Origin: Perna viridis
Lineage: Eukaryota
DNA: 64,000 nucleotides
Direction: 5' to 3'
NCBI GenBank assembly: GCA_037379345.1
Contig: CM074521.1
Coordinates: 8,556,001 to 8,620,000, forward strand
The notes beneath the pieces are model-generated. The model was not told where the DNA came from, did no database searches, and saw nothing but the letters and a program-made list of their open reading frames with translations. Below are positions 38,801 to 54,222 of this stretch, piece by piece; within the stretch, counting starts at the first letter, position 1, and each line of letters begins with the position of its first letter. The position numbers were made by a program, and so were the translations under genes.

Positions 38801-41800
38801 ATTTGTGTTTTAACAAGGGTTACAGACCTATTGGTTATGATTTTTAGATATGTTTAATTGTGTTATATTTTTTTACAGTGGCCAGTGTTAATAGGGGAGT
38901 GTTGCCATCACTCCAAAGTACTAAAAGTACTTTAACCCAACCGCATATTTTGCTCATGTCTCAAGTCAGCAGTTTCTGGCCTCTGTATGTTTTGTTTAAT
39001 GTTCACTTCAATAGATTTTACTTTATTTTGCTTAGTTGTTACTTTATTTTCCTGGAGTATATAGGGGTAACTATTTTGATGTACCCGTGTATACTATTAT
39101 TATTGGACCAGCTGCAGTCTGCCCAGTAGTGTGAGGGTTTCCTCGTCGTTCATTGAAGACCCATGGGTGGCCTTGAGCTGACATTTTTTAAGTTGGGGTT
39201 CAGAGGGTTGCCTTTTTTTACATAATCACAATATACATTCTTCTTATATTCAATGTAAAAGAATAAGAACAAACATTTTACCAGAAGCTTATAAATGTGA
39301 AAAAAGTCAAGATCTAAACATAAGGAGGCAGATCTAAGGTAAGGGAAACAACTCTTACACAACTCTTACACATTATTGAAACGTTTGCGTATCAATCTCG
39401 TGTAAGCATCAAAGTAACTTGGATTGATTTAATTCTGTCTCAAATGAAATCTTGGTAGGCTTTGGTGAAATTGAATATGATACAAACATATCACTGATTT
39501 CAAGATTTGTGTCACTTAACCTAGGTCTACCTCCTTAAAAATTCAAGACGCTAATGTATAAAAGTAATCTTAGAATTCAACATTCCCGAAAAAATTTCAC
39601 CTTTGTACAGTATCACCATATTGCTGGGTCAGAAACAAGGCTAGCTGTTCCAGGAAGTCTGGATCTCCTCTCATTGGACCATACTGGAATATGAAACGTT
39701 CATCTTCTGCCTCCTAAAATACGTAAAATAGCATGGATATTTGTAACTACAAGAGGATCGAGGATTGACAACCGTTTATGTTTGAGGCATGTGCTATATA
39801 CCTTTATTTTTATTTTCTTAATTTGAATATTCGAATGCGAAAAGAAAAAGTGAGTTTATAAAAATGTTTAAAACCGTTGTTTACATCCTTTGTAAAATCG
39901 TAGTTATAAGTGGCTTGCTCCCACTATCGAATATGCAGCTCGACTAATATAACTCGGCTTGCATATTTCTAACTGACAACTGTACAAAAATTAGTTCTAT
40001 GTTCATTACGGTCATTTACAAAAGAAGTTCAAAGAGAATATCATATTGATGACACCTTTTATTGTAGTGTTAAAATCTTATATATAGAAACCCTATGTAA
40101 TTTGCCCTATATCGCGTGCCCTGTGTTGCATACTCTATATCGCTTACCCTAAATAGCATACCCTATATAGCTTACTCTAAATAACGTACTCTATATCTCG
40201 TGTTGATACAGCATGTGATACAGGTAGATTTCTACATGTAATATTCACTATGACTATATTAAATGCCCTCGTTTCTTCGAAGCTGAATTGCGTTCTGTGG
40301 TGTATACTCTACTTATATAACTCTTATATATAATGATGAAAAAACAAGAATACACAAAAATAAAGTAAAGCACGTACAACAAACTTTGGAGTGTCATCAT
40401 ATTTAAAAATAATTTAATTTCAGATGTAACGAGCTTTCTGATTGACCAAATTTTGCTATGTGACTGTGACGTCAATAAACCATTTTTGATGATTTACTCG
40501 TTAAATTTTTGTACTAAAATTAAATTTTATCAGTCTATTTGAAATAAGCTCAATGCCCGTGGTGCGAAATCGAAATTATTTCCTCGTAGTTACAAATTTC
40601 TGAAATTGAGCGAGCCCATGATTTAAAGAAAGTAGGTACAGGAGTGTTCATGTACAGTACAAGTAATTTTTTTTCAAATGTGAAAATCAGACTCAATCAA
40701 TAAATGTACACAATGACATGCAGGGGTGGATCCATGATTTGAGTTTAGGGGAGCGTTAATTGAATAAAATGCCGTGCAAAGCAAGGCAAAAAATATAATG
40801 GGGTGAAACTTGTGAATTTTTTTTTTCTTACCGATTTAGGGGGGCGGGCGTACGCCCGGTACGCCAGTCCTTGGACCCGCCCCTGACGTGTATAATAATC
40901 ATAATATACGTATTTATTTTTGCATGACATGTGCGCACACACAAAGAAGAAAACTAAGTTTAAGAAATAAAAACTTTGAGGCCTTCAGCTGCATTAGGTA
41001 AGGTCGAACCCGACTGGCTCTCGTTTACCACCAATATATACTGAATATTACATGTCAAAACCCGTATGATATGTCATATCGACCCTAGATAACTCACAGT
41101 ATCTAAATAACCTCAAGGGCTATCGGCCAAGGGGTGATATAAGTCGAGGGTCTATAAGGTATATGCTACGTATAGATTTTGATATGTATTTATGTGACCT
41201 CACATTCGTTATCTGATTATATTGTATTTCATGCAAAAATCTTGAATTCTGATTGGGTAATGGGTGATCAGTTATTTTAGTCTATTCCCTGCACATTCTT
41301 ACTTGCCCCGCCTCCACTAAACAGTGATTAGTGGATCGATATATCACCCCGACGGCAGCGATATATCACACGATATAGCACCCTCCTCTAGGATATATCA
41401 CCCTCGAAGTCACGATATATCACACTATCGTATTCAGTATAACATAACACATACTGCCTGTAGTAGAGGGTGTTACGCATCGTATCACACTCTGTAAATA
41501 TATCACCCTCGACTTCGTCTCAAGTGATAAATTTACCTCGTGTAACACCCCCTAATACAGGCAGTATGTGTATAATATAAGATACGCAACATAGATCAGG
41601 TTTTTGATATAGGGAATGTAATAGGGTAAACATGTTTAGTGTAAGAGATACAGGGTTTAAACAATCACTTATCATGCATAAAAAATCGTGTATTTTAATC
41701 TAAATATATACTGAAGTCGAATAGATGCATACAATTTATAATATAAGGATGCGCGATTGGAATGAGAACTATTTTTCAGTTCATGTAGAATATGATTGGG

Positions 41801-42287
41801 TCGGATTTTGGGGTTTGTAAGATCATACATGAGTGCATAGGAAACACTGTAGATAAGACAGCTAGAATGTCATCGAGTACTTATAAATATGGTAACTGTG
41901 CAAAACACATACAATAAAGCAAATTAATATGAAAGAAAGACCGTCCATACTAAAGTTTACAGTAAATTACTCTCACCAAAACAAGATATTAGGGATAGGA
42001 GTACGAGTCGTTTAAATAGTTTTCCTAAAAAAAAAATCAAAAAACATTAAACAAAAAACAAAAAAACAAAACAAAACAAAACAAACAACATATATCAAAG
42101 AAAGATAACTCCGTGTTTACACATTGCCTACCATCGTTATTTTTGTCGATTCTAGTAGCATTTCCTTGCATCCAGAAATAGTCTCCGATCCCGGGGCACC
42201 CATCGCCAAAGGGGTGATTGGAATTTCTTTTCGTTCATCGTATAATTCCAAGTCTTCGAATAAATCACGTTTTGGTATGATCGACAT
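31328..42287 (-). CDS. PLP-dependent aminotransferase class I/II, paralog B, 418 aa
   Basis: Minus-strand exons 42287-42132, 39713-39601, 37246-37092, 36365-36216, 35561-35438, 34915-34793, 34222-34108, 33400-33329, 32138-32035 and 31472-31328 total 1257 nt and are open. Motifs FQYGP, AGATHG, VEDPTY, SNPRG, EDVY, TFSK-ILAPGLRLGW, GGFFLW, CIRIS. Internal exon lengths are identical to paralog A. Confidence 0.93.
31680..32040. repeat. Degenerate 52-60 bp tandem repeat containing copies of the exon 9 donor site of paralog B
   Basis: Core caatt.tgattggataa appears at least five times. Units end cctacctagg, ctcacctggat and cttacctggat (the real donor). Confidence 0.8.
34253..34595 (-). mobile_element. 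Degraded tRNA-derived SINE
   Basis: B-box-like ggttcgatcct on the minus strand near 34535-34545 and a (CAAT)n-type tail at 34253-34275. Confidence 0.5.
35165..35331. mobile_element. GGATCC-terminus MITE, sister of 40721..40886
   Basis: ggatccaggatttgagtttagg...gcaaagcaaggcaaaaaata...gccagtccttggatccg. Confidence 0.7.
35817..35889. repeat. (AT)n microsatellite
   Basis: About 36 uninterrupted AT units. Confidence 0.97.
38925..39210 (+). mobile_element. Degraded Nin-domain-like SINE/retroelement remnant
   Basis: tttaacccaaccgcatattttgctcatgtctcaagtcagcagtttctggcc resembles the Nin-domain core as I recall it; later segment ttgaagacccatgggtggccttg. Confidence 0.4.
39324..39534 (-). mobile_element. 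Kolobok-like MITE, copy 5
   Basis: Same family; ends GGTCTACCTCC|ttaa. Confidence 0.8.
40721..40886. mobile_element. GGATCC-terminus MITE
   Basis: CAGGGGTGGATCCA...TGGACCCGCCCCTG termini; sister of 35165..35331. Confidence 0.7.
41040..41580. mobile_element. Foldback-type non-autonomous element(s) with long inverted arms
   Basis: cacatactgcctgta...gggtgttac pairs with gtaacaccc...tacaggcagtatgtg (41447-41571). Repeated gatatatcac motifs. A second, imperfect inverted pair spans 41050-41190. Confidence 0.5.
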
Positions 42288-43267
42288 TTTTCATTTGCTT
42301 TGTAGACAGCGACAGCTCAAATATGACATGTATGGAGGACCAAAGGCGTTATAAAATGTCATACGACTAGCTGTTACACTCTTCACTGGGGAATATGGTT
42401 CATAAGTCTCGTCATATGACTCCGTGGTTTCACGAGAGTAGATCCTAGTCTACCATTCAATCTTTAGAGATTTGCCATTTTCAGAGCGTTAGGTTCAGTA
42501 TTAAAAGCAAAACATATTTTCGTGTAAAAAATACCCATAAAAATGACAAATAAATATATTCACATGACAAAAGTGCAAAGACAAAGTGTAAAATAGAATG
42601 TTTAGCATTGTAATAAGCGTTTCGAGATCCTAGAAGTAAACAATAAAATGCAGACCGGTTTTCGGGTTCTCTCTTATCCCCGAAAATTTACCCTTATCCT
42701 CGAAATTAAAACAAATGATATTCCAGTAGTGGGCTTAGTCCAGTACAATCCCATAAATTTAGTCGTTAAACTTGGTCAATGTCATAGCAAGTGTATGAGT
42801 CATCAACATAAGGGTTTTGGAGAGCTAAAAGACAAAGTAACTTTGAATCATAATAATTGTTATTTCATTGTTTTGTTTTGTTCTGTTTTTTTAATGAATA
42901 TTCATGTAGTTGAAAATTTTCACTTATTCGACTGATGCTGTTTCGGTGGTTAGTGCATAAACAACATTATTTTAGAAGAATGAAGGATAAGAGTATTGAA
43001 TATTTCGAGGTTATGAGTTAAGTAGTACCCCAGCTAAGAATCATGCAATGTTATGCATGGTAGGCCAGACTACATATCTTTTTTTTTTGTATTTTGTTAA
43101 AAAATGTATGGGAAACAGAAATTAACATATGGCTGTTCAGATAACCCATGTTCAACCCTAGACTCCTAATGCATGTAGTAAATCAAATCACACCAAAGGT
43201 CAGCGGTCAAAGTGGTGAATATTCATAAACTGGGATTGGAGAGGGCCAATTACACCATGGAGCAGAG

Positions 43268-43436
43268 TATTATGATATTGATGTGTAATTCAGTTATTTC
43301 AGAACACGGTTTTCAGATATCTGTCAATTTGTAGTTCTTCTCATATTTTTGTAATAATAAGTTTTCTTATATTATAATTATTTCATATGATTACGGATTT
43401 ATACTTCAGTGATGTCCGGAATCGCATAACATAATA
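43268..43436 (+). repeat. 5' LTR (169 bp)
   Basis: Identical by eye to 51580..51739 except a 9-bp insertion (cggaatcgc). Termini TATTATG...CATAATA. Confidence 0.92.
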
Positions 43437-43437
43437 A

Positions 43438-43956
43438 CAAAAATTCCAGGAACTTTCATCTAGACATCTCACTATATATATTTGGTTAGGGACATGCGAT
43501 TTAACTGAGAAACGTGGGAAATATGTACATTTAGTGTCTACAGGGAATGAACAAGTACAGCAAATCTGCGATAACTATAAGAAAATATACAAATATTTCC
43601 CAACAGTTAAATTAGTTTTCCTCGAAATTTTGTTTTATTCTGTGTTTTTGTGGAACTTGTCAACGGGACACCCGCAACCAGAAGAATTCCGGGAAACAGA
43701 TAAGATCCTTGAAGGACAAGTTTCTCAAGTTAATAAATTTATTAGGGAAACTAACTTACTTCTCAGAGGAAATTCACCGAACTTTGGACTTGATTTTCAA
43801 AGAGTAAGGAAACATGCAAACTGTGCACCAGTTTACTCAAATAATTACGGACTGTATATAGATGGAATTCACCCTCACCCGGACTTAGCACGTCTCTGGT
43901 TGATCAGAATTATGACACGACTTGTTGAGGACTGTAAAAATACAAATTTGTTATAA
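43438..43956 (+). pseudogene. 5'-truncated SGNH/GDSL hydrolase-like ORF inside the Gypsy element
   Basis: Frame is open from 43438: ...TIYIWLGTCDLT (block III-like)...LYIDGIHPHP (block V DxxH). Block I (GDS) is absent. Confidence 0.75.
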
Positions 43957-44009
43957 TTCCAATTTTGATCGTCTCTATTTTATGCCTGTCTATGTAGTAT
44001 ATAGGGAAG

Positions 44010-44122
44010 GTGAGATTTATCTCATGCCCACTGCCCGATTATAATGTGAGATTTATCTCATTTAATACACTGTAGTGACATTTTTCCTAGCATTACTTAT
44101 AACAGTGTGAGATTGATCTCAT
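44010..44122 (+). promoter_or_regulatory. Array of three GTGAGA-N4-TCTCAT hairpin motifs
   Basis: Copies at 44010, 44046 and 44107 with unrelated spacers. Confidence 0.7.
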
Positions 44123-44199
44123 CTCTCAGACTCTGCAATGTAGGTAATTTTACCCATTTATTTTGTGTTATTGTTCCATGCATATATGTACATGAATCT

Positions 44200-45453
44200 A
44201 TGTCGTCGCCCGAATCAGATGGTGAGAACGAATTAATTTTATCAGACGATTTTCTGTTACATAACCAAACAACAAGTTGAACAAGATATCGGTTATCTAT
44301 TACAAAATTCTTCAAGAAATTCACACGATCCTTTCGATTTTGGAATATTTGAAATTTCAGAACAGGATGAACAGGACATAGATTATTTTTCGCACGATCC
44401 TACAAGAAATTTAAACGATTTTTTTTATTTACCTGAGGTAAATACACCTGCAACTCCAGCTAGGTTACAATTACATGTAGGTCCAGATAACTTACAAAAT
44501 CATAAAATTATGGAAAAATTAGCAAGTTGTAGAAACTTTGGTGGCTATCCTCATGAAAAGGCATCTCAGTTTTTAGCCGAATTCGAATCAAATGCAATTC
44601 TTCATAATATTATGCCTGATGAAGATGCAAGAAAAATAGCAGTCCTTCATTTACATTTGTGTGGACCAGCCCTTACATGGTTTAACTCGTTAGGGTCTGA
44701 TAAATCTTTTTTGGCGAAATTTCCTACGCATATTCAAACAAAAGTACACAGAAGTAGATCTAAACAGCCCAAGTTTATTGCTTGAAAGTGAGGCATTCTA
44801 ATCTACAAGGTGGACACAAGGACAAACCATTGATGATTTTTATTCTCAGCTTTTAGAAAGAGCTACAATATTGCATAAGAATGATAATGAAATTTTGATA
44901 AAATTTATCAAAGGGCTACCGGATCAGCTAGCCTTTTTCGTAAGAGCAGGTAACCACACTGACAGTTCAAGCGCATTATCTGCAGCCAAAATGGGCGAGG
45001 CCTATGGGTACCGGTCAAGCAATATTCCGCTAGTGGCCGCAGCTAAACCGGTCACAAATAAAAAATCAGTTTGCAAGTGTTCAAGATTTGCAAAATTTAA
45101 AAGCTAGTGTTCTTGATGAATTTCAGGGGCAAATTAACTCGTTAACACAAGCAATTTCTAATTTGAGTACAGATTTGTCACGTCAAAAAGGTGGAAATAT
45201 AGAGAATCATATTTCTCGCCCTCGAGATAGAGGCAACATGACACCAACAGCTCATAATTTGTGCCGAAAGTGTAATTCACCGGGTCATTTTGCACGCGCG
45301 TGTAACTGGAATGAACAGGGCAATATATATCCCAAAGCTCAATGTAATACTTGTGGACAATCTGGCCATAAAGCGCCCCAGTGTGTTAAATATCGTTCGG
45401 GAAACAAGAGGACCCCGGGGTTCACAGAGCAAGACCCCCGGGAGGGACGTTAA
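44200..45453 (+). pseudogene. gag: gag, with stops and frameshifts
   Basis: FLAEFES...LHLCGPALTWF and KFIKGLP capsid-like segments. Knuckles CRKCNSPGHFARAC and CNTCGQSGHKAPQC. Confidence 0.88.
45399..45442 (+). promoter_or_regulatory. -1 programmed ribosomal frameshift signal (gag-pol)
   Basis: G GGA AAC in gag frame, followed about 8 nt later by the GC stem cccgggg...ccccggg. The -1 frame is open into the protease at 45597. Confidence 0.8.
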
Positions 45454-48400
45454 GTGAAAATGACGTAGAAATAGAAGCCCGTGAATCAAAGTCTAATTTA
45501 ACGTCACCAGAACCAGAAAATATTAATTCACGTACTTCAACAACTTCACATTTTGGTAGCGATCATGACATAAGTAGTGAATTTAAATTTCTTTATTTGC
45601 CTGTTAAAATTTCTAATCACGAGATTTCAGCACGGATAGACACAGGAAGTTCTATAAATGTAATTTCAGTTCAACTTTATAATTTAATACCAGACTCCTT
45701 CAAATCTAAATTTACTGCCACAAATGAATATATTATTTCAGCAAATAACCAAAGGGTTCAAATCTACGGTACTGCCGATATTAAAGTTTCTACGCCGAAT
45801 GGAAAACATTGGATAAATGTGTATATATTAGCACAAACTTTTCATCTATTCATTTAAGGAACAAGTTACCTAATTTCACACAAGGTTATTCTAGACTTTA
45901 CTGATTTAAGCGGTGGATCTAAGCATTTTAAGGTAAAAACACAACATGAAGTATCTATTCCTCCCAATACCGAAATATTAGTATGGGGGAAAGTTGGTGG
46001 AAAAGCCCGGTTTGGAATGCAAGGCCTGTGTGTTATTAAAATAAATCAAGACCGAGGCGTTATTATCTCAAAGGCAATAGTTACTGTAAATAATGATAAA
46101 CTTGTACCTGTTAAAATTTTAAATTTTACAAATGAGATTGTCCATGTGAATAAAGGACAGATTTTAGCTGATTTAGAATTACTATCTAAAGAACATATAT
46201 GTATATCAGTAAGTGACGATAGTGACACTCATTTTGTGCAAAATATTCAATTAGCAAAGGACAAATTAGATATAAAATGTGAGACAGCTGACTCTAAATT
46301 GTTGTCATATTTTAATTTGCCTGATCGATTATCGGAACAACAAAAGGCCTGTATGGTTCAATTATTACAATCTCACAAGGAGATTTTTGTAACTGACGAG
46401 AATCCTAATTTGGGATACACAGACATTGTGAAACATAATATTTGCCTTAATCCTAATTTCCAACCTAAACATCAGCGATCGTACCGATTGACTCCGGAAA
46501 AGAAAGAAATTTTAAGGCACCATCTAGATGAACTTATGCGCCAGGGAGTAATATCTCCGGTTGATGAATGTGAGGACATCCCTATTACAAGTCCCATAGT
46601 ACTCGTTTCAAAAAGAGTTCATGTGAATAATTCTTCAGAAAAAATTTCCAAGGAAAATAGTTTATCTAAATTTCGTGTTTGCTGTGATTTTCGATATTTG
46701 AATAGCCAAACTCAACATTTTAGTTACAGTATTCCTGATTTGCAAGACTTGACAGAGTCTTTTTCAACAAAAAAGCCAAATTTTCTAACTTCCACTGATC
46801 TCTCTTCTGGATTTTTCCAGCTTCCAATTGTAAATGACAGTCAAAAGTACACTGCATTTAACACGTGCTTCGGGACGTTCAAATTTTTTAGATTACCGAT
46901 GGGACTCAGTTCATCGCCACCCTCTTTCCAACTTTTAATGGACAAAGTTTTGAAGGGACTTACTTTTAAGTCATGCCTGTGTTATCTCGATGATGTACTA
47001 ATAGCGTCGGAAACTTTTGAGGAGCACATCAGTGATTTGAATGAAGTTTTTACTAGATTAAAAACTGCGGGTTTAAAACTAGGCCCCAAGAAATGTGTGT
47101 TTGCTCAAGAATCTTGTATTTATTTGGGACATAAAATTTCAAGTAGAGGAATTGAGCCACCCCCTGATCGTATTAGGGCACTCGAGGATTATCCGGCGCC
47201 AAAAAGTGTTAAGGAATTGCGCCGTTTGATTGGTCTTCTCAACTGGTTCCGCAAGTACATACCCAACTATAGTGCAGAAATGGAACCCCTAACAAAACTT
47301 TTGAAAAAATTCGTCCGTTTCGAGTGGAAAATTGAACAACAACGAGCATTTGAGAGAGTAAAATCATTATTGATAAATTCACCTGTTTAAGCTTTTCCTG
47401 ATTATAACCTACAATTTCGCATTGCAGTTGATTCTTCAAGTAAGGGAATTGGTTACTTATTATATCAAATTGACGACAACAGTGAAGTGCGAGTTGTAAG
47501 ACTCGGATCAAAAGCGTTGAGTAGATGGCAAAAGGCCTATGGACCAACAAAGCTGGAAATGCTTGGAATGGTAACGGCTGTGCTCGAATGTTCATCTTAT
47601 CTCCGGACTAAACCATTCATAATTGAATGCGAGCATCAAGCTTTAAAGCCTCTGTTCAATAATCGTCTTAAGGGTGCGATATTCGAGCGCTGGATAGCAA
47701 TTCTCCAGCAGTATAATTTTGAAATTAAATACAAAGCTGCTAAAGAAATGCAAGTTCCTGATGCACTGTCAAGATGTGTGCGAAATTCAACAAATACATT
47801 CGACAGTCCAGAAGAGGAAGATCCATTCTTTCCTTATCATCAGGAGACAGCAGGAAATATAATTGTTCCGGAGGGAAAGCTATTTCCATCCATAGTAAGA
47901 AATGCGACATCAAGTGATGATGAAATTCCGCAAATAAATAACATTTGTTTGCCACATACAATGCCGAAAAATGATTTTACGGCAAATTTTCCTCACAAAC
48001 GACTTGATTTTAAATACTCTAATGAATTTGTTGCTAATACCGAGGATGTTGAACCAATTTTTAAAACATCGCCAGTAAAACAAAAATTGAGATCAAAGCT
48101 GCAAGCGCACCCCATTGAAACGAGTGTTCAAATAAAAGAAGTTCAAAAACCTATAAATTCAAACGAAGTCGGACAAACAGAATCTTCCGTAGCTAGGAAT
48201 GATATAGACATACTCAATGAGACGATTGACAATAAATTGAATAGTTCTTCCGATATTCAGGATGCATCTACAGAACCGATCCAAGTTCAATATTTTGATC
48301 AAAGTACAGAGAGCGCTGATAACTCAGCAGTTGGAAAAGTGTTTGATCAAACAACTGATATTGAAACTGTTAATCAGGAATCGAAAAATTTGCTATCAAC

Positions 48401-50108
48401 AGAAAAATGACGAACAAATTAATGATGCTAATTTGAACTCAATAAAAGTGTTACGTGAACAAGGGTTAACACGCGAGTCAATAATTAAGCTTCAGAGTCA
48501 AGATCAATATTGTAAACCAATTATTGAGTACCTAGATAAAGACAGACTTCCAAAATCACAAAAGGATTCAAGAAAACTTTTACTTTTCACTATATTGATG
48601 GATTATTGTTTCATTGTCGAACGAAAAAATCAGCTCGTACTAAAATAATGAATAACTACCAACTTGTCATACCTGAAATTTTGATTAAAAGTTTGCTTTC
48701 TTTGTACCATGAATCTACATTAGCTGGGCATAGTGGCATACGAAATACTTTGGATTTAGTTAGTGAACAATATTTCATTCCTCAAATGAGTCAAAAAGTT
48801 ACAAATTTTGTCCGTTCTTGTCATGAATGTCAGAGCAGGAAAAATACTACTTTGAAAACAAAAGGAAATGTTACTGCTTTCCCTACACCGTATGCTCCAT
48901 TTGAAGTATGGGAAATGGATTTACAATATGGTCCCGTTCCAATGTCTCGTTCTGGAAACGCCTATATTTTTACGGCGATAGATTTATACAGCAAATATAT
49001 GTTTGCAGAGGCTATTCCAAATACGGACCCACTAACAGTAGCGAATGCCTTATTTAAATTAGTTACTCAATTTGGAGTGTGTAAAACTATTGTGACCGAC
49101 CAAGGCTCGGAATTTATTGGAAAATGTTTCAAGGAAGTTTGTCGATTATTTGACATTGTACAGGAATATACACCCAGTTTCACACACCATTGCCTGGGAG
49201 CATGTGAAAGGCCACATCGAACTTTATCAGAAAGATTAACTAAGTTTTCTCCGTTTGAAGTGGTGTACGGGACAAAGCCTAAATTTCCATTATCTGTCCA
49301 CATTAAAGACACTGATTTCACGTCCTTACCGAAAGACTGTCATGAATATATACGTCAACATGTCGAAAAGCTGAACATAATTCGCAAACAAGTTGAGACA
49401 AATATTGTAACATCTCAAAGCAAGATGCTCGACAGAGTAAATAGTGACAAAATACCAACAAATTTTAATGTAAGTGATTATGTATATTTATTGAAGGAGC
49501 CGACGGGCCAAGGACAGAAGTATAAAAATAAATTTGCTGGTCCATATGTAGTATCAGATATTCACAGCCCACATATGTATAAATTGAAGGATCCTTGTAC
49601 AGGAAAATTATTTTCACAACCTATTCATGTTAATAGAATAAAATCTGCTTATATGCGTGTTCCTAATCCTTCAAATTATTTTCTTGATCAAGTTATCACA
49701 CAACAACCCGTGGAACATATATCTAGTGACATTGAGCATCAGTCGGAATCAGATAAATCACCAAGTGCTCAAAATAATAGTAATGAAAGTGAACACGAAC
49801 AGGCGGACAAGTCAGTTAATGAGGAATTATCGGATAGAGGAAGACCTAAACGAACAATTATAATACCGGAAAGATTTCGAGATGAAAATTTTGTGAATGA
49901 CAATGATATGAGTAGTGTTTCTGAGGACTTTTCCGAGACCATAATGAAAGTGAAAAGATTTCTCGCTCAGAAAACGGAAAACGGGAAAAAACTGTTTTTA
50001 GCTCATATAGTCGGAGAGCCTGCCCAGCACGCAATCTGGCTACAGGAAAATCAGTTGGGACCAAAGGCGAAAGCGAAATTAAATTCTCGCCCACCGCCAG
50101 TAGTATGA
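45399..50108 (+). pseudogene. pol: pol (protease, RT, RNase H, integrase, C-terminal chromo-like domain), disrupted
   Basis: In-frame TAA at 45855 and 47388, frameshifts near 48405 and 48590, and an apparent deletion in the integrase core after LSERLT. Confidence 0.92.
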
Positions 50109-50161
50109 TTTTGATGTTATATATTCTAACACGGATGCTTGATGTAACTTTGTAAATAATA

Positions 50162-50537
50162 TAGTCCGTGAGAATTTATCTCATGACTAGTTTTCGTATA
50201 TAAAACAACTCTTTGATTTGATATATTTAATTTGCTTGTGAGAATTTATCTCATAGCATCCGTTTACTGCAGGACCTAATTTTGGAAGACGGATTTTGAA
50301 CCAGTCAGATGCACATGCCTATTGTTAGTGAGATTAATCTCATAACAACGTTTATAGACTCTTATGTAAATATAAAATACATGGAAAGAATCCATAGAAG
50401 TTCTTATGCAGATAGTGCACCGTGAACATTTTTTTTTCAGAAATAATTATGATTGATGCAAACCCTGAATTTGATAAGTGTAATTATCCTCCAAGACGAA
50501 GTTGCAGTAACACATCTGTGAGATTAATCTCATGATG
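50162..50537 (+). promoter_or_regulatory. Array of four bulged GTGAGA-N4/5-TCTCAT hairpins
   Basis: Copies at 50168, 50238, 50328 and 50518, each with a different but complementary 4-5 bp basal stem. Confidence 0.75.
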
Positions 50538-51570
50538 AATATTCATATTGACTTTTGATACCAACGGACAATTTTGAAACTTTTGCTAAAATTTTGATGT
50601 TGATTAATTTGTTAGTTAATATTTTTACTTGAATATTCCGGCATCACTGATCAAGTTGTTGTGTATATTATAACCATATTTTTCATCACCATGGTGACCT
50701 ATTTTTACAACATTTTCATTGTTTCCGATTCACTTTTCCTTACATATAAGAACATTGACTTCAAGTTGAACACCATATGAAAGTATATAAATGCGTTTGT
50801 CTACAGTATTTTGTTAATATAATTTTTCACAAGTATTTACTTTAAAAGTGAATTTTGACATCTCAAAAATTTATAGTTGAAATTTTTAAATATTTTTGTT
50901 TGCAACAAAGAGTTTCAGTGTGGATTTAATTTAATTTAATTTAATTTTTTGTATTCAAGTCATAATTTTATATCAGTCTAGTAATCTTTAGTAGGACATT
51001 GAAGAGAGTTATGACCCCTGCCAAGTTCGATAATAGGTATATTATAGCGTTGTATCACAAAAGAGGTTGTATGATTTTCTGTCTATATGGTTATATATGT
51101 CACTCACAAATAAAACCTAATGTAGCAGTGCTTTTAGTGGTCAAATGTGAAAATGTGTGTGTGAAAATGCGAAATTCGTGTCTGGTACATGTAATTTATG
51201 TTTAAAAGAGAGTGAGAGAGAATGAAGCTGTTTGAAGTGGTCATCACTATACGCATTTTCTACTAAATAAGAGTTTTAAGGTCTCTAGTGATTCCATATA
51301 ATTTGTTATATTTAACTTGCCATTCTTTTGACGCATAGGATTATCATACATGTTTCACTCTAAATATGTGTTATACAAAAAGCTTACCGAGAATATTATC
51401 GCTATGATCTTGAGATTTGAGTTGAAAGTGGTTTTGATTTTAGTGTTATAGTAGTGTGTATCAGGTAATTGCTCAGTGGATAAGAGTGGTGGAAAATATT
51501 TTTTTTTGGTGGCGTATGAAGTGAGTTTAAAACTGAATCCCACATGTAAAATTCCGGGGAATTTTCTTCT

Positions 51571-51579
51571 GGTGGGGGA
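51571..51579 (+). other. Polypurine tract
   Basis: GGTGGGGGA directly abuts the 3' LTR. Confidence 0.8.
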
Positions 51580-51739
51580 TATTATGATATTGATGTGTAA
51601 TTCAGTTATTTCAGAACACGGTTTTCAGATATCTGTCAATTTGTAGTTCTTCTCATATTTTTGTAATAATAAGTTTTCTTATATTATAATTATTTCATAT
51701 GATTACGGATTTATACTTCAGTGATGTCATAACATAATA
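51580..51739 (+). repeat. 3' LTR (160 bp)
   Basis: Direct repeat of 43268..43436. Confidence 0.92.
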
Positions 51740-51897
51740 TACATGTACAGCCTCGTTTTGGAGAGTTGGAATAAAAATGTCGTTAAGATAAAACGTGGTT
51801 TTTGTAGAGCTAGTTCCCAATCCAAAAATACGGAAAATATAAGTAAAACCAAAGTTGTGACAAGAGGTCAACGTGGTGAATATTCATTGACTGGGAT

Positions 51898-52048
51898 TAA
51901 AACATAAACAACCTAATAACCAAAAAAATAAAAAAAATAAAACATAAAACAACCTAATTACAAAAAAAAATTAAAACATAAAACAACCTAATAACCAAAA
52001 AAAAAGAGAAAAATTAAAACATAGAAACACCCTAATAACCAAAAAAAA
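51898..52048. repeat. A-rich tandem repeat, 4 units of about 35-40 bp
   Basis: aaaacataaaacaacctaataaccaaaaaa units. Confidence 0.8.
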
Positions 52049-54222
52049 GATGTAGCCTTTTTATGTGGTGGGTTCACATATTACAGAATTTGCATGATTC
52101 TTTCAAAGGCTGCTACTTAATTTGCCGAGTTAATTAAGCTGGGCCGTTACCAAATGTTACGACATGATACCGGCAACATCATATTTTAGATTATACTTCA
52201 TAATGCATATACAAAATTAGTATATTTTAATCTAAATATATGATATTAGAGACATATGTTGACATTTGTTTCAGTAATAGGAAAACTGGTGATATATATT
52301 TTTATATAAAAATCAGTATTGTCTTTGTAAAATTGCGTTAGTTTTTTCTTCCTTTCTAGATATTTTTTTATTATTAAACATAAGCAAAGCTGAAGAAAGT
52401 ACGTCGAAATCGAGCATTTGGTCCATATGACTACATAAATTTCCCGCTAAAATTACTTTATTTAAAGGCAAATTGCAAAAAAAAGCACAATTGGCGACCA
52501 TATTTTTTATTATATATTTCGATGTAATCTACTTAGAACTACTAGTGTGCGGAGATTTTAGCACATCTGGATATATGTCATTTGGTATCGCCCCATATTT
52601 TGGGGATAAAAGTTACGTAGTAAAATGTACATTATTGCAAAATTTAATAAAAGAAAATAGAAAGAAAAGAGAAGAAATGTCTACTTTTTATCATTGTAAA
52701 ACACTATCCCTATTCAATATATATGACCCTACATGTATTATGAGTTGAGTGGAATAAATAATTCTAGATGTGAATTTGAACACACTTGCTTCCTGTGCAT
52801 GCATAACTTGTAAATGTAGGACGTATACATGATCTTATTTAACCGATTATCAAACTATGAAAAATCTATTTGAAGTTTCATTATTGTTTTTACCGAATGT
52901 GCTCCGGAACTTACCAGCTCCTGCTTCGTAGATTCCAAGAATATCTTACTACATCCTTTGACACTCGGTTTTCCACTGTAGAAATTACAGGGCACGCGCG
53001 CATGATAGAGTTTGTATTCGGAATCCTTTTCTACCATCTCTAAACGCGTTTATAAACTGCTCTGATAACACGTTGCACGTGACCAGGTATGTAAGGCAAA
53101 CAAGGACGTAAATCAATTTAGTACAAGTTTTTTGTGAGAATTAGGCAAAATTAGAAATATTGAAACAAAGCATGTATGTCAAAAACCCACAATATAATAT
53201 TCCAAGAAGTCATCTTTCTAACATTGACACCGTATCACTGGGTACGTATGTTTGGAAAAAATCATTAGAAGGATTGATGTTTTTGACAAGGTAAGGGCCA
53301 TTGAAATGTTCGATTGCTAAATTGTTACAAAATGATGGGGAATTTCTTTTTATTCCTTGATCCTGATGGACCAATTAATCAAATTAAACTGTCAATCTAA
53401 TCATGCTGCACCTGGTGCCTGATTCTTACATAGACTGATCACGCTTCACTTTAAATATACTAAGTCCTTAAATCTAACAGGGATATTTAAATAAAGAGTT
53501 GTTTTAAAATCCGAAATTAGAAGGTCAGCGATTAAAAAATAAACAAAATGCGCTGGTCATTGATACTAGATTTAAATAAACAGGTTCGTATAGAGTGAAG
53601 TTTTGTGTCATTTTTACATTTTAGTTTTCAGTGTTGATAAACTTCCTGAATTGGATTATTACAATTCTGAAGCTGCAGAAAAATGTGTACAAATATATAA
53701 GTTGGATGAGACAGAACTAATTTTTTACTCCTTATTTGTACATTGCTCTTAGGACGCTTACCCCACCAATGTACCTTGTTCAAGCTCTCAGTTTTTAAGA
53801 GTTCGAGTTGCACATTTACTTTTCTTTCTTTGTACATTGCACGTGTTATTTTGGCTATTTCATGTTCTTTTCGGTGCGTGTCTGTATTCCCTGTCTTGAC
53901 GGTCTTTATCCAGATCCATGGTTAAATTATTTTGATTTCTGCATGAATTTAGGTGTCCCTTGATAATTCTCTTATTGATAAGATCAAACATGGTCCACTT
54001 TTATTTTTTTCCAAAGTAAAATGGTTACATGTATGGTCGTTGTTTCATGAATATCCTCACAGTATTTACTTATAAATTACAGAAGACAAACAAGGTTATA
54101 TAAAGTTACTCCAAGGTTTCCAAAATTTTATTTTGAAAATAAATGAATTAAATTAAATGCCACAGTAGTCCCTGAAGCAGGTATAGTTTGTAGCACTACT
54201 GGAGGTTTCTACTGAAAATAAT

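What the first reader, a model, noticed from the sequence alone, without database searches (positions are those of the whole stretch)
44010..50537. Two arrays of a co-varying bulged RNA hairpin bracket gag-pol of the Gypsy element
Seen: seven copies of GTGAGA-(TTTA/TTGA/ATTTA/TTAA)-TCTCAT at 44010, 44046, 44107, 50168, 50238, 50328 and 50518, separated by unrelated spacers. Flanks differ between copies but stay complementary in the same register around a single 5' bulged base: tagtc[c]/gacta, tgct[t]/agca, ttgtt[a]/aacaa, catc[t]/gatg, taa[t]/tta, ag[t]/ct (copy 44010 fits poorly). All seven keep a closing G-T pair, which is a G.U wobble only on the sense RNA. The arrays begin 54 nt after the SGNH stop and 60 nt after the pol stop. 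Established: multi-copy bulged hairpins serve as protein-binding sites (IRE arrays, MS2/PP7 operators), but this sequence is not an IRE. Inference: an apparently undescribed cis-acting RNA element, possibly for packaging, export, protection from NMD, or translation of gag behind an upstream ORF. Alternative: DNA palindromes containing GATA (AGATAA) or TAATCT sites.
Basis: partly seen in the sequence, partly recalled or inferred. Interest (0 to 1): 0.88.

Follow-up and report, generated by a model that had tools for sequence, protein, structure and literature searches.

The report
Conserved bulged RNA hairpin in mussel retrotransposon
A small bulged stem-loop is repeated in every untranslated spacer of a mussel Ty3/Gypsy retrotransposon lineage; its top never changes and its base changes only in compensating pairs, so it is very probably an undescribed RNA signal, perhaps the tag by which the element's own Gag protein picks its RNA.

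Summary
Seven copies of GTGAGA-N4/5-TCTCAT lie on the + strand at the stated coordinates (0.04 expected by chance). They bracket gag-pol of a degenerate Ty3/Gypsy copy.

The motif is not a quirk of this copy:
- A covariance model finds 68 copies in the 723-Mb genome, all in about 15 loci of this retroelement clade.
- It also occurs in related elements of Mytilus edulis, M. coruscus and two unnamed assemblies.
- All 76 copies examined lie on the coding strand and outside ORFs.

Across 29 independent flank types:
- The 6-bp apical stem is invariant.
- The closing pair is G·U in 47 of 54 unique copies, G-C in 3 and A-U in 1.
- The loop is mostly UUNA.
- The flanks form a 3-7 bp basal stem only in the register with one 5' bulged base (98 paired positions against 28.9±7.5 when permuted, 0 of 20,000), with double compensatory changes.

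Rfam has no match. It is not an IRE, an MS2 operator or a histone stem-loop.

Function is inferred. It is a sense-strand protein-binding RNA element, most plausibly a multivalent Gag/NC recognition signal. Export or stability, and translational control, remain rivals.

Copies also act as recombination joints: the SGNH ORF is a cassette bounded by hairpin cores. No expression data could be obtained.

The parts
43264..43267 (.). Left copy of the putative 4-bp target-site duplication AGAG.
   Evidence: The sequence before the 5' LTR ends in AGAG and the sequence after the 3' LTR starts with AGAG.
43268..43439 (+). 5' LTR remnant, about the first 172 nt of a roughly 283-292-nt LTR. The rest of the LTR, the primer-binding region, the leader and the first hairpin are deleted.
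   Evidence: 149 nt are 100% identical to 51580-51728. The segment aligns to both LTRs of the fuller copy L039 (884-1056 and 8972-9141) and then breaks off.
43436..43956 (+). 3' half of the SGNH/GDSL-fold hydrolase gene (open frame 43534-43956), truncated at its 5' end.
   Evidence: It aligns to L038 1869-2467, where the full ORF is 250 aa. An AlphaFold model of that ORF has pLDDT 92.4. Foldseek's top hits are GDSL-like lipases, sialate O-acetylesterases and PAF-AH (E 5e-8 to 1e-5).
44004..44029 (+). Hairpin copy 1. Core 44010-44025 (GTGAGA TTTA TCTCAT). There is no basal stem in the family register, only an alternative GGG/CCC pairing.
   Evidence: In copy L038 the left flank of this copy is fused to the right flank of copy 2, so one unit was gained or lost by recombination between cores.
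44042..44064 (+). Hairpin copy 2. Basal stem TAA/TTA, bulge T44045, core 44046-44061.
   Evidence: Model R1 scores it 37.0 bits.
44104..44124 (+). Hairpin copy 3. Basal stem AG/CT, bulge T44106, core 44107-44122 (loop TTGA). It lies 75 nt before the gag ATG.
   Evidence: The sister copies L038 and L039 have GAGA/TCTC (4 bp) here, so the window copy carries a stem-breaking substitution.
44200..45453 (+). gag, in pieces because of frameshifts, with two CCHC zinc knuckles.
   Evidence: ORFs. Pfam zf-CCHC E 1.2e-8. Retrotrans_gag is found in the L039 orthologue.
45597..50108 (+). pol, with protease region, RT, RNase H and integrase in Ty3/Gypsy order, broken by frameshifts.
   Evidence: Pfam RVT_1 7.6e-30, RT_RNaseH 5.9e-12, Integrase_H2C2 4.1e-19, rve 6.6e-16. 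ORF list.
50162..50189 (+). Hairpin copy 4. Basal stem TAGTC/GACTA, bulge C50167, core 50168-50184 (5-nt loop ATTTA).
   Evidence: The minimum-energy fold equals this structure, -10.9 kcal/mol, z -4.63. R1 scores 41.0 bits.
50233..50258 (+). Hairpin copy 5. Basal stem TGCT/AGCA, bulge T50237, core 50238-50254 (loop ATTTA).
   Evidence: The minimum-energy fold equals this structure, -10.1 kcal/mol, z -3.62. R1 scores 39.4 bits.
50322..50348 (+). Hairpin copy 6. Basal stem TTGTT/AACAA, bulge A50327, core 50328-50343 (loop TTAA).
   Evidence: -8.3 kcal/mol, z -3.48. The minimum-energy fold shifts the bulge by one base (G bulged, A-U closing pair). R1 scores 37.9 bits.
50513..50537 (+). Hairpin copy 7. 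Basal stem CATC/GATG, bulge T50517, core 50518-50533 (loop TTAA).
   Evidence: The minimum-energy fold equals this structure, -9.2 kcal/mol, z -2.62. R1 scores 40.1 bits.
50538..51570 (+). About 1 kb of 3' untranslated region with no open frame of 100 aa or more.
   Evidence: The region is conserved at about 96% in copy L039.
51571..51579 (+). Polypurine-tract-like GGTGGGGGA abutting the 3' LTR.
   Evidence: Read directly from the sequence. Its function is inferred from position.
51580..51862 (+). 3' LTR, ending in ...GTGACA.
   Evidence: It aligns over 283-292 nt to both LTRs of L039 and is followed by AGAG.

Best explanation
What it is. The seven sites are copies of a lineage-specific structured RNA element carried on the genomic (sense) transcript of a Ty3/Gypsy retrotransposon clade of mytilid mussels.

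Each unit is a helix of about 25-30 nt with these parts:
- A basal stem of 3-7 bp whose sequence is free but co-varies.
- One unpaired base on the 5' side: U in 42 of 54 unique copies, C in 6, G in 3, A in 3.
- An invariant 6-bp apical stem, GUGAGA/UCUCAU, closed by a G·U wobble.
- A U-rich tetraloop (UUUA, UUGA, UUAA or UUCA; sometimes 5 nt).

One to five units sit in each untranslated spacer, never inside an ORF. The spacers are the leader or the SGNH-gag spacer, and the stretch just after the pol (or SGNH) stop.

Inferred mechanism. The bulge next to an invariant helix forms a sequence-specific docking site for an RNA-binding protein, and several units give avidity. The most likely partner is the element's own Gag through its two-knuckle CCHC nucleocapsid domain. 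The arrays would then mark the full-length RNA for selective packaging. The copies 12-80 nt before the gag AUG could also damp translation once Gag accumulates, in the manner of an operator.

Side effect shown here. The identical 16-nt cores serve as recombination or template-switch joints that add, remove and move units and the SGNH cassette.

Sub-odds. A folded sense-strand RNA element under selection: about 0.8. A protein-binding site: about 0.65. Gag/packaging specifically: about 0.35. The confidence given for this entry (0.55) is for the statement as a whole, read as a selected sense-strand RNA hairpin that works as a protein-binding cis signal, with Gag as the leading but unproven partner.
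For: SHOWN
1. The motif is real and non-random.
2. It is exclusive to this clade. There are 51 exact matches genome-wide against 0 for the reversed control, and 68 covariance-model hits at E<=0.01. All lie in about 15 loci that also match this element's gag, pol or SGNH.
3. The core survives where nothing else in the spacers aligns. Families A and B share about 66-70% nucleotide identity in pol, and their UTRs share only the hairpin cores. The core also occurs in M. edulis, M. coruscus and two other assemblies.
4. All 76 copies lie on the coding strand and outside ORFs. Model R1 scores the sense strand 38-41 bits and the antisense strand about 16 bits.
5. The basal stem is significant only with a 1-nt 5' bulge. 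Over 29 flank clusters the summed stem length is 98 against 28.9±7.5 when permuted (0 of 20,000). Fifteen clusters have a stem of 4 bp or more; five other registers give 0 or 1.
6. On the 54-row alignment the covariation score is 0.334 against 0.142±0.014 (0 of 500 shuffles), and slid registers reach at most 0.165. Cells with changes on both sides number 114 against 55±6. The apical pairs are 54/54 invariant.
7. Apparent orthologues differ by compensatory or wobble-preserving changes: CTTACC/GGTAAG to CTTACT/AGTAAG to CTTATT/AGTAAG; TGGAA/TTCCA to TAGAA/TTCTA; CAGTA/TACTG to TAGTA/TACTG.
8. The closing pair is G·U in 47, G-C in 3 and A-U in 1 of 54.
9. An M. edulis copy with uninterrupted ORFs and 99.5% identical LTRs carries 2 units between SGNH and gag-pol and 3 after the last ORF.
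10. Deletion derivatives that kept only the ends and SGNH still carry the arrays, and occur at two or more loci.

SUGGESTIVE for Gag
The type of Gag RNA-binding tail tracks the hairpin type. Two CCHC knuckles go with this hairpin (window, L044, L046). Three knuckles go with a different repeated hairpin in the same positions (L042). An RGG-rich tail without knuckles goes with no such hairpin (L041, L047).
Against: - No RNA-level data.
- Thermodynamics do not separate the strands. The antisense strand folds as well as the sense strand.
- G·U against A·C counts in the basal stem favour the sense strand only mildly: 16 against 8 in the first four pairs, and 24 against 25 over six.
- Retroviral zinc knuckles usually grip unpaired G, whereas these loops are U-rich and the bulge is mostly U.
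- The Gag-tail correlation rests on three classes from six contigs.
- About half of the flank clusters have weak or no basal stems. Several are explained as recombinant chimeras or as copies in dead elements, but not all.
- Placement right after stop codons and in the 3' UTR fits export or stability elements at least as well as packaging.
Confidence: 0.55

Rival explanations
1. The hairpins are binding sites for a host factor that exports or stabilises the unspliced, multi-ORF RNA. They would work like the MPMV constitutive transport element, the IAP/MusD RNA transport elements, or the Rous sarcoma virus stability element that shields a long 3' UTR from nonsense-mediated decay.
For: - Arrays start 31-140 nt after stop codons (SGNH, pol or the last ORF) and lie between the last ORF and the 3' LTR, which is the classic place for such elements.
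- Multiple copies are typical of weak export elements (my own knowledge).
- The structured, strand-specific evidence is the same as for the main reading.
Against: - The motif is absent from host genes. All 68 genome hits lie in this clade.
- Relatives with the same ORF plan but a different Gag tail lack it or carry a different hairpin. A conserved host adaptor does not predict that.
- Copies also sit in the 5' leader of elements that have no upstream ORF.
Confidence: 0.2
2. The hairpins control translation on a polycistronic RNA. They would help ribosomes reach gag behind the SGNH ORF by reinitiation or internal entry, or act as an IRE-like switch whose effect depends on 5' or 3' position.
For: - In uninterrupted copies gag-pol lies behind a 249-251-aa SGNH ORF, with 2-5 hairpins in the 150-350-nt spacer. 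The last hairpin ends 12-50 nt before the gag AUG.
- In family B two hairpins end 22 nt before the gag AUG.
Against: - Arrays of the same units follow the last ORF, where nothing is left to translate.
- They also occur in leaders with no upstream ORF.
- A hairpin of -9 to -11 kcal/mol does not by itself stop or recruit ribosomes (plus my own knowledge).
Confidence: 0.1
3. The element acts at the DNA level during reverse transcription or recombination. It would be a single-stranded DNA hairpin, or simply a portable 16-nt homology, that pauses reverse transcriptase and promotes template switching, so that its main 'function' is module shuffling.
For: - Breakpoints fall inside the core. Family-B copies L032, L033 and L036 lack L034 7143-8025 (the SGNH cassette), and the two alignments overlap by exactly the core.
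- Their chimeric hairpin (left flank of one unit, right flank of another) has no basal stem.
- The same holds in family A (L038 against L039 and against the window).
- SGNH lies 5' of gag in some lineages and 3' of pol in others, always next to hairpins.
Against: - Recombination between any identical repeats is expected and needs no selection.
- It does not explain the maintained bulge, the G·U closing pair, the invariant apical stem or the compensatory changes in the basal stem.
- No recombinase other than integrase is encoded.
Confidence: 0.07
4. The conserved strand GUGAGA is a decoy 5' splice site (a U1 snRNP site). UCUCAU is conserved only because it must pair with it, giving a regulated mask, as in the negative regulator of splicing of Rous sarcoma virus.
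For: - GUGAG matches the 5' splice-site core GURAG (my own knowledge).
- Constraint on one strand plus a need to pair would explain why both strands of the apical stem are invariant.
Against: - The bases before G are not AG-like.
- A 10-13-bp hairpin would hide the site.
- The gag-pol deletion derivatives L035 and L037 show microhomology junctions, not GT-AG junctions, so there is no sign of splicing at these sites.
Confidence: 0.04
5. The sites are double-stranded DNA palindromes bound by a dimeric transcription factor (for example GATA-type) and act as enhancers.
For: - TGAGA...TCTCA is a palindrome.
- TTATCT, which reads AGATAA on the other strand, is present when the loop is TTTA.
Against: - The loop varies, so the GATA site is lost in 19 of 54 unique copies: the TTGA, TTAA and TTCA loops plus the GTTT copies.
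- Orientation is strictly tied to the coding strand in 76 of 76 copies.
- The outer G..T asymmetry and the 5' bulge are kept.
- The flanks differ in sequence but stay complementary. Duplex DNA recognition needs none of these features.
Confidence: 0.03

Closest known systems
Retroviral and retrotransposon packaging signals, and multi-hairpin packaging signals of RNA viruses (HIV-1 SL1-SL4, MLV psi, alphavirus repeated stem-loops, dispersed MS2 operator-like hairpins); comparison from my own knowledge
   Same: - Short stem-loops on the genomic sense RNA.
- Several copies with a conserved recognition feature on variable stems.
- Located between the primer-binding region and the gag AUG in SGNH-less copies.
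- Specific to a lineage.
- The MS2 operator also couples coat-protein binding with translational repression.
   Different: - The invariant part here is a base-paired 6-bp helix beside a bulge, not a purine-rich loop.
- Arrays also lie 3' of pol.
- No binding or packaging data exist.
- There is no sequence or Rfam relationship.
Iron-responsive elements (ferritin 5' UTR; five-copy array in the transferrin-receptor 3' UTR)
   Same: - A bulged hairpin with a free-sequence basal stem, a 5' bulge, a fixed-length apical stem and a conserved top.
- Used singly in the 5' UTR and as arrays in the 3' UTR.
   Different: - The loop is UUNA, not CAGUGN.
- The bulge lies 6 bp (not 5) below the loop and is mostly U, not C.
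- The apical stem sequence is invariant here and free in IREs.
- No Rfam IRE hit even at E<=10.
MPMV constitutive transport element; IAP RTE and MusD MTE; RSV stability element (from my own knowledge)
   Same: - Structured cis elements between the last ORF and the 3' LTR.
- They act on unspliced retroelement RNA, and repeated units raise activity.
- The RSE sits just after a stop codon, as these arrays do.
   Different: - Those elements are 100-400-nt composite structures bound by host NXF1 or PTBP1.
- This one is a 25-30-nt unit, also present 5' of gag, and found only in one retroelement clade of the genome.
HIV/BIV TAR-Tat and RRE-Rev type recognition (from my own knowledge)
   Same: A bulge next to conserved base pairs, the geometry that lets a basic peptide read an RNA major groove. 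This would explain an invariant helix beside the bulge.
   Different: - The element is not in the R region of the LTR.
- No Tat- or Rev-like ORF was recognised; the 181-aa ORF after pol in M. edulis has no Pfam match.
- The units are multi-copy.
Integron attC sites (for the cassette aspect only)
   Same: An accessory ORF (SGNH) is bounded by imperfect hairpins with an extrahelical base, and it is present, absent or relocated with breakpoints in the hairpin.
   Different: - No tyrosine recombinase is present.
- The host is a eukaryotic retroelement.
- Ordinary homology-driven template switching explains the pattern.
LTR retrotransposons with an extra GDSL/SGNH esterase ORF (Vesta of bdelloid rotifers, PMC5408684; esterase ORF1 of CR1/L2 LINEs, PMC3905857)
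   Same: A Ty3/Gypsy-type element carrying an SGNH-fold ORF besides gag-pol.
   Different: - Here the ORF lies mostly upstream of gag, and 3' of pol in some lineages.
- The hosts are bivalves.
- The paper on the rotifer elements (PMC5408684) does not contain the words 'hairpin' or 'stem-loop'.

Membership tests
Iron-responsive element (IRE) | Apical hexaloop CAGUGN | tested here: not met
   The loops are TTTA 27, TTGA 9, TTAA 5, ATTTA 4, TTCA 3, TTTTA 2, GTTT 2, TTTT 1 and TTGT 1 among 54 unique copies.
Iron-responsive element (IRE) | Unpaired C on the 5' strand, five base pairs below the loop | tested here: not met
   The bulge lies six pairs below the loop. It is T in 42, C in 6, G in 3 and A in 3 of 54 copies.
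Iron-responsive element (IRE) | Match to the Rfam IRE models | tested here: not met
   cmscan of 43200-51900 at E<=10 returns only two chance hits (SNORD38, mir-M7) elsewhere in pol.
MS2/PP7-type coat-protein operator | Bulged A two pairs below an ANYA tetraloop (MS2), or the PP7 equivalent | tested here: not met
   The bulge is six pairs below the loop and is rarely A (3 of 54). The loop starts with U. The operator features are taken from my own knowledge.
Histone mRNA 3' stem-loop (SLBP site) | GGYYYU-UHUH-ARRRCC: 6-bp stem with GG at the base and pyrimidines on the 5' strand | tested here: not met
   The geometry is the same (6 bp plus tetraloop), but the 5' strand is GUGAGA, which is purine-rich with G·U at the base. 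There is no Rfam hit.
Any curated Rfam family | Score above the family's gathering threshold | tested here: not met
   No match at the hairpins, even at E<=10.
Retroelement packaging signal (psi-like) | Lies on the genomic sense RNA in the untranslated leader before gag | tested here: met
   In L034 the hairpins at 760 and 819 lie between the LTR end (647) and the gag ATG (856). In L039 the hairpins at 1366 and 1456 lie after the LTR end at 1175. In the window the third hairpin core ends at 44122, before the ATG at 44200.
Retroelement packaging signal (psi-like) | Specific binding by the element's Gag/NC, and a requirement for encapsidation | not testable with these tools
   There is only a correlation between the type of Gag tail and the type of hairpin.
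Structured RNA element supported by covariation | Base pairs kept through compensatory changes, beyond shuffled and shifted controls | tested here: met
   All six basal pairs show changes on both sides. The covariation score is 0.334 against 0.142±0.014. Other registers give nothing.
Ty3/Gypsy LTR retrotransposon (the host element) | gag with CCHC, then protease-RT-RNase H-integrase in that order, flanked by LTRs with a target-site duplication and a polypurine tract | tested here: met
   Pfam hits in that order. LTRs at 43268-43439 (truncated) and 51580-51862. AGAG on both sides. GGTGGGGGA before the 3' LTR. The primer-binding site is missing from the window copy because of the internal deletion.
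SGNH/GDSL hydrolase (the extra ORF) | SGNH fold | tested here: met
   The AF2 model has pLDDT 92.4 and pTM 0.88. The Foldseek top hits are all GDSL-like lipases, acylhydrolases, sialate O-acetylesterases or PAF-AH, with probability 1.00.
SGNH/GDSL hydrolase (the extra ORF) | Catalytic blocks: Ser in block I, Gly, Asn, and Asp-x-x-His in block V | tested here: inconclusive
   D33 and S34 are invariant. G93-T94-C95 stands where GxND is expected. D220-G221-x-H-P is present. The Asn position appears to be replaced. Pfam and the PDB sequence search give no hit.

The most novel reading that the evidence does not exclude
The hairpin serves two roles. It is the operator-like address by which the element's Gag recognises and silences its own polycistronic RNA. 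Because every untranslated spacer carries the same 16-nt core, it is also a built-in joint that lets reverse transcriptase swap whole modules between positions and between co-packaged relatives. Here the swapped modules are the SGNH esterase cassette and hairpin units. That would be a retroelement counterpart of cassette exchange, and a mechanism for the modular ORF capture seen in many LTR retrotransposons.
Probability: 0.15. Interest if true: 0.8.

Novelty: new variant of a known kind. Interest (0 to 1): 0.62.

Why it matters
- Cis-acting RNA signals of invertebrate LTR retrotransposons are almost unknown. This one has unusually clean comparative support: an invariant helix beside a bulge, a co-varying base, strict strand and location rules, and presence in a copy with uninterrupted ORFs and nearly identical LTRs.
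- It gives a small, defined RNA (25-30 nt) for testing how a Ty3/Gypsy Gag, a relative of Arc, PEG10 and PNMA capsids, chooses its RNA.
- It may explain how three ORFs are handled on one transcript.
- It documents concretely how repeated RNA signals double as recombination joints that move an accessory esterase gene.
- It could be added to Rfam and used to annotate this clade in bivalve genomes.

Tried and rejected
With 15 specified bases in databases of this size these are chance hits, so nothing was learned.
No RNA-seq, strand or transcript-end evidence was obtained, and read laying was not used.
Other Gypsy lineages of the same genome could therefore not be checked for hairpins of their own.
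- Pfam at E<=1 and the PDB sequence search did not recognise the extra ORF. Only the fold search did.
- I considered splicing as the origin of the gag-pol-less copies L035 and L037. I rejected it because the junctions show CA(C)AAAA microhomology and no GT..AG.
- The repeated hairpin of L042 (GAAGTG-ATTG-CACTTC) is not enriched in this genome: 13 one-mismatch hits against 6 for the control, all scattered.
- Counting G·U against A·C in the basal stem as a strand test was inconclusive. Folding energy does not separate the strands either.
- The scan's earlier notes hold nothing on the hairpins.
- Literature searches found SGNH ORFs in retroelements but no description of this motif.
Only the 36-nt hairpin units were aligned and modelled.

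Full report
OBSERVATION

The pattern GTGAGA-N3-6-TCTCAT occurs seven times in the window. All copies are on the + strand, at 44010, 44046, 44107, 50168, 50238, 50328 and 50518. Expectation is 0.04 per shuffle. Allowing three mismatches adds no further copy inside the element. Neither array has tandem periodicity.

The four downstream copies fold into the proposed bulged hairpin as their minimum-energy structure (-8.3 to -10.9 kcal/mol, z -2.6 to -4.6). The three upstream copies form only the apical stem or an alternative fold.

THE HOST ELEMENT

Pfam gives zf-CCHC, RVT_1, RT_RNaseH, Integrase_H2C2 and rve in Ty3/Gypsy order, but the frames are broken.

The 149-nt perfect direct repeat (43268-43416 and 51580-51728) is only part of the LTR. 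Comparison with a fuller sister copy (L039, LTRs of 292 nt at 95.9% identity) gives these boundaries:
- The 3' LTR is 51580-51862.
- The 5' LTR stops after about 172 nt.
- It is joined directly to the 3' half of the extra ORF (43436-43956).

AGAG flanks both ends, and GGTGGGGGA precedes the 3' LTR. The window copy is therefore a dead copy. An internal deletion removed the rest of the LTR, the primer-binding region, the leader, one hairpin and half of the extra gene.

The full extra ORF (250 aa in sister copy L038) has no Pfam or PDB sequence match. Its AlphaFold model (pLDDT 92.4) matches GDSL/SGNH hydrolases throughout the Foldseek list. Such ORFs are known in rotifer LTR elements and in CR1/L2 LINEs (PMC5408684, PMC3905857).

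DISTRIBUTION OF THE MOTIF

The genome is 723 Mb. The closest named homologues of the extra ORF are from Mytilus edulis and M. coruscus.

Within this genome:
- GTGAGATTNATCTCAT occurs 51 times, against 0 for the reversed control.
- A covariance model built from the units finds 68 copies at E<=0.01.
- All of them lie in about 15 loci that also match this element.

These loci form two families:
- Family A: the window plus three copies at 95-96% identity.
- Family B: pol about 66-70% identical at the nucleotide level.

The untranslated regions of the two families do not align except at the hairpin cores.

The motif is also present in:
- an M. edulis element with uninterrupted ORFs and 99.5% identical LTRs;
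- M. coruscus;
- two other assemblies (L043 and L046).

All 76 copies examined lie on the coding strand and none lies inside an ORF. Positions are regular. One or two units sit in the leader or 2-5 in the SGNH-gag spacer, with the last ending 12-80 nt before the gag ATG. Another 2-5 sit after the stop of pol, of the last ORF or of SGNH.

STRUCTURE AND COVARIATION

I reduced the 76 copies to 54 unique ones and then to 29 clusters of unrelated flanks.

Permutation test:
- With exactly one unpaired base 5' of the core, the flanks give a summed stem length of 98.
- Re-pairing 3' flanks at random gives 28.9±7.5 (0 of 20,000 reach 98).
- Fifteen clusters have stems of 4 bp or more.
- Five other registers give sums of 2-28 and 0 or 1 such stems.

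Alignment test on the 54 rows:
- The 12-pair structure is paired in 84.7% of cells.
- The covariation score is 0.334 against 0.142±0.014 (0 of 500 shuffles). Slid controls reach at most 0.165.
- All six basal pairs show changes on both sides.
- The five inner apical pairs are identical in all 54 rows.
- The closing pair is G·U in 47 rows, G-C in 3 and A-U in 1.

Basal stems are as different as TTAGCC/GGCTAA, CTTACC/GGTAAG, GTAGAA/TTCTAC, ATAGTA/TACTAT, ATTACA/TGTAAT, TAGTC/GACTA and TTGTT/AACAA.

Apparent orthologues differ by compensatory or wobble-preserving steps:
- C-G to U-A to U·G next to the bulge in L043, L044 and L045.
- G-C to A-U between L034 and L038.

The bulge is U in 42 of 54 copies. 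The loop is UUUA in 27, UUGA in 9, UUAA in 5 and UUCA in 3, with a few 5-nt loops.

Evidence for the strand:
- The strict co-orientation with coding.
- The G·U closing pair, which would be A·C on the other strand.
- The 22-25-bit gap between sense and antisense scores of the model.

Energy and wobble counts in the basal stem do not discriminate between the strands.

WHY SOME COPIES FIT POORLY

The cores are recombination joints.
- In family B, L034 has hairpin-SGNH-hairpin after pol. Three of the four SGNH-less relatives (L032, L033, L036) lack exactly the 882 nt between the two cores, and the two flanking alignments overlap by the core itself; in the fourth, L031, the deletion also removed the core.
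- The upstream unit in L034 has a good basal stem (TGGAA/TTCCA). The fused unit in the relatives joins foreign flanks and has none.
- Family A shows the same pattern. L038 has hairpin-1.35 kb with SGNH-hairpin, while L039 has the two units 13 nt apart. The window has one unit more than L038, with swapped flanks.

SGNH lies before gag in most lineages (L041, L042, L044-L047, L038) and after pol in others (family B, L043), next to hairpins whenever the motif is present.

Two gag-pol-less derivatives (L035, L037) arose by microhomology, not by splicing. They kept the arrays.

WHAT IT PROBABLY DOES

Shown: a selected, strand-specific, folded element that is private to one retroelement clade and sits in every untranslated spacer.

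Inferred: it is a protein-binding site. An invariant helix next to a bulge is the geometry by which peptides read RNA sequence, and multiple units give avidity.

I rank the element's own Gag/NC as the likeliest partner (a packaging tag, possibly an operator-like brake on gag translation), for two reasons:
- No host gene carries the motif.
- Relatives with the same gene plan but another Gag tail differ in hairpin. L042 has three knuckles and a different repeated hairpin, GAAGUG-AUUG-CACUUC three times after pol, plus an AUUG-loop hairpin between SGNH and gag. L041 and L047 have RGG-rich tails and no such hairpin.

This correlation is thin: three classes from six contigs.

The rivals are a host-factor export or stability element, translational control of the polycistronic RNA, a DNA-level template-switch signal, a masked decoy 5' splice site, and a GATA-type DNA palindrome. 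I weigh each in its own section. The last is the least compatible with the data.

COMPARISON WITH KNOWN ELEMENTS

Rfam has no match. The element fails the defining features of the IRE, the MS2/PP7 operators and the histone stem-loop (see Membership tests). It works most like a retroelement packaging or transport signal, but it is built differently: a short unit, an invariant paired core, and arrays on both sides of gag-pol. I file it as a new variant of a known kind.

LIMITS

- There is no expression or probing evidence.
- The collection-wide pattern scans were uninformative.
- Other Gypsy lineages of this genome could not be fetched.

Noticed in passing
L034:7128-8041 (G000 C10, minus strand) against L032, L033, L036; L038:1084-2467 against L039:1366-1410: The SGNH ORF behaves as a cassette bounded by two hairpin cores. 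It is present or absent with breakpoints inside the 16-nt core. It lies 5' of gag in some lineages and 3' of pol in others.
   Followed up: yes
window 43268-43956: The window copy has an internal deletion joining LTR position ~172 to the middle of the SGNH gene. The retained LTR part is nevertheless 149/149 identical to the 3' LTR while gag-pol is frameshifted. This suggests the copy was made from an already defective RNA, or was homogenised later.
   Followed up: partly
L042:6995-7276 and L042:1145-1162 (Logan contig of SRR25569774): A more distant SGNH-gag-pol element has a different repeated hairpin in the same places: GAAGTG-ATTG-CACTTC three times after the pol stop, and AGAAAGG-ATTG-CCTTTCT between SGNH and gag. 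The repeat contains AUUGCAC, the heptamer known (from my own knowledge) as the U1A-binding loop. This may be coincidence.
   Followed up: partly
L035 (G000 C2:17302000-17311999) and L037 (G000 C7:36427000-36436999): These are non-autonomous derivatives: LTR-leader hairpin-start of gag joined by CA(C)AAAA microhomology to SGNH-hairpin array-LTR. Both loci share the same junction.
   Followed up: partly
L041:1609-2844 and L047:1834-3174: The Gag proteins of two related SGNH-first elements end in an RGG/RG-rich tail instead of CCHC knuckles. L047 has tandem repeats of about 30 nt between SGNH and gag.
   Followed up: no
L039:16-883 and L039:9256-9501 (G000 C5:39347500-39357499): The fullest family-A copy is inserted in a tandem satellite of about 46 nt that continues on both sides.
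   Followed up: no
L044:16466-17011 (M. edulis): A 181-aa ORF lies directly after pol and has no Pfam match. It sits between pol and the 3' hairpin array.
   Followed up: partly
window 39318-39538 against 56168-56387; 41667-41709 against 52195-52241; 43202-43237 against 51863-51898; A-rich repeats at 42015-42102 and 51906-52045: Short direct similarities (80-89%) and A-rich low-complexity tracts lie on both sides of the element. The insertion may sit inside an older repeat or a nested element.
   Followed up: no
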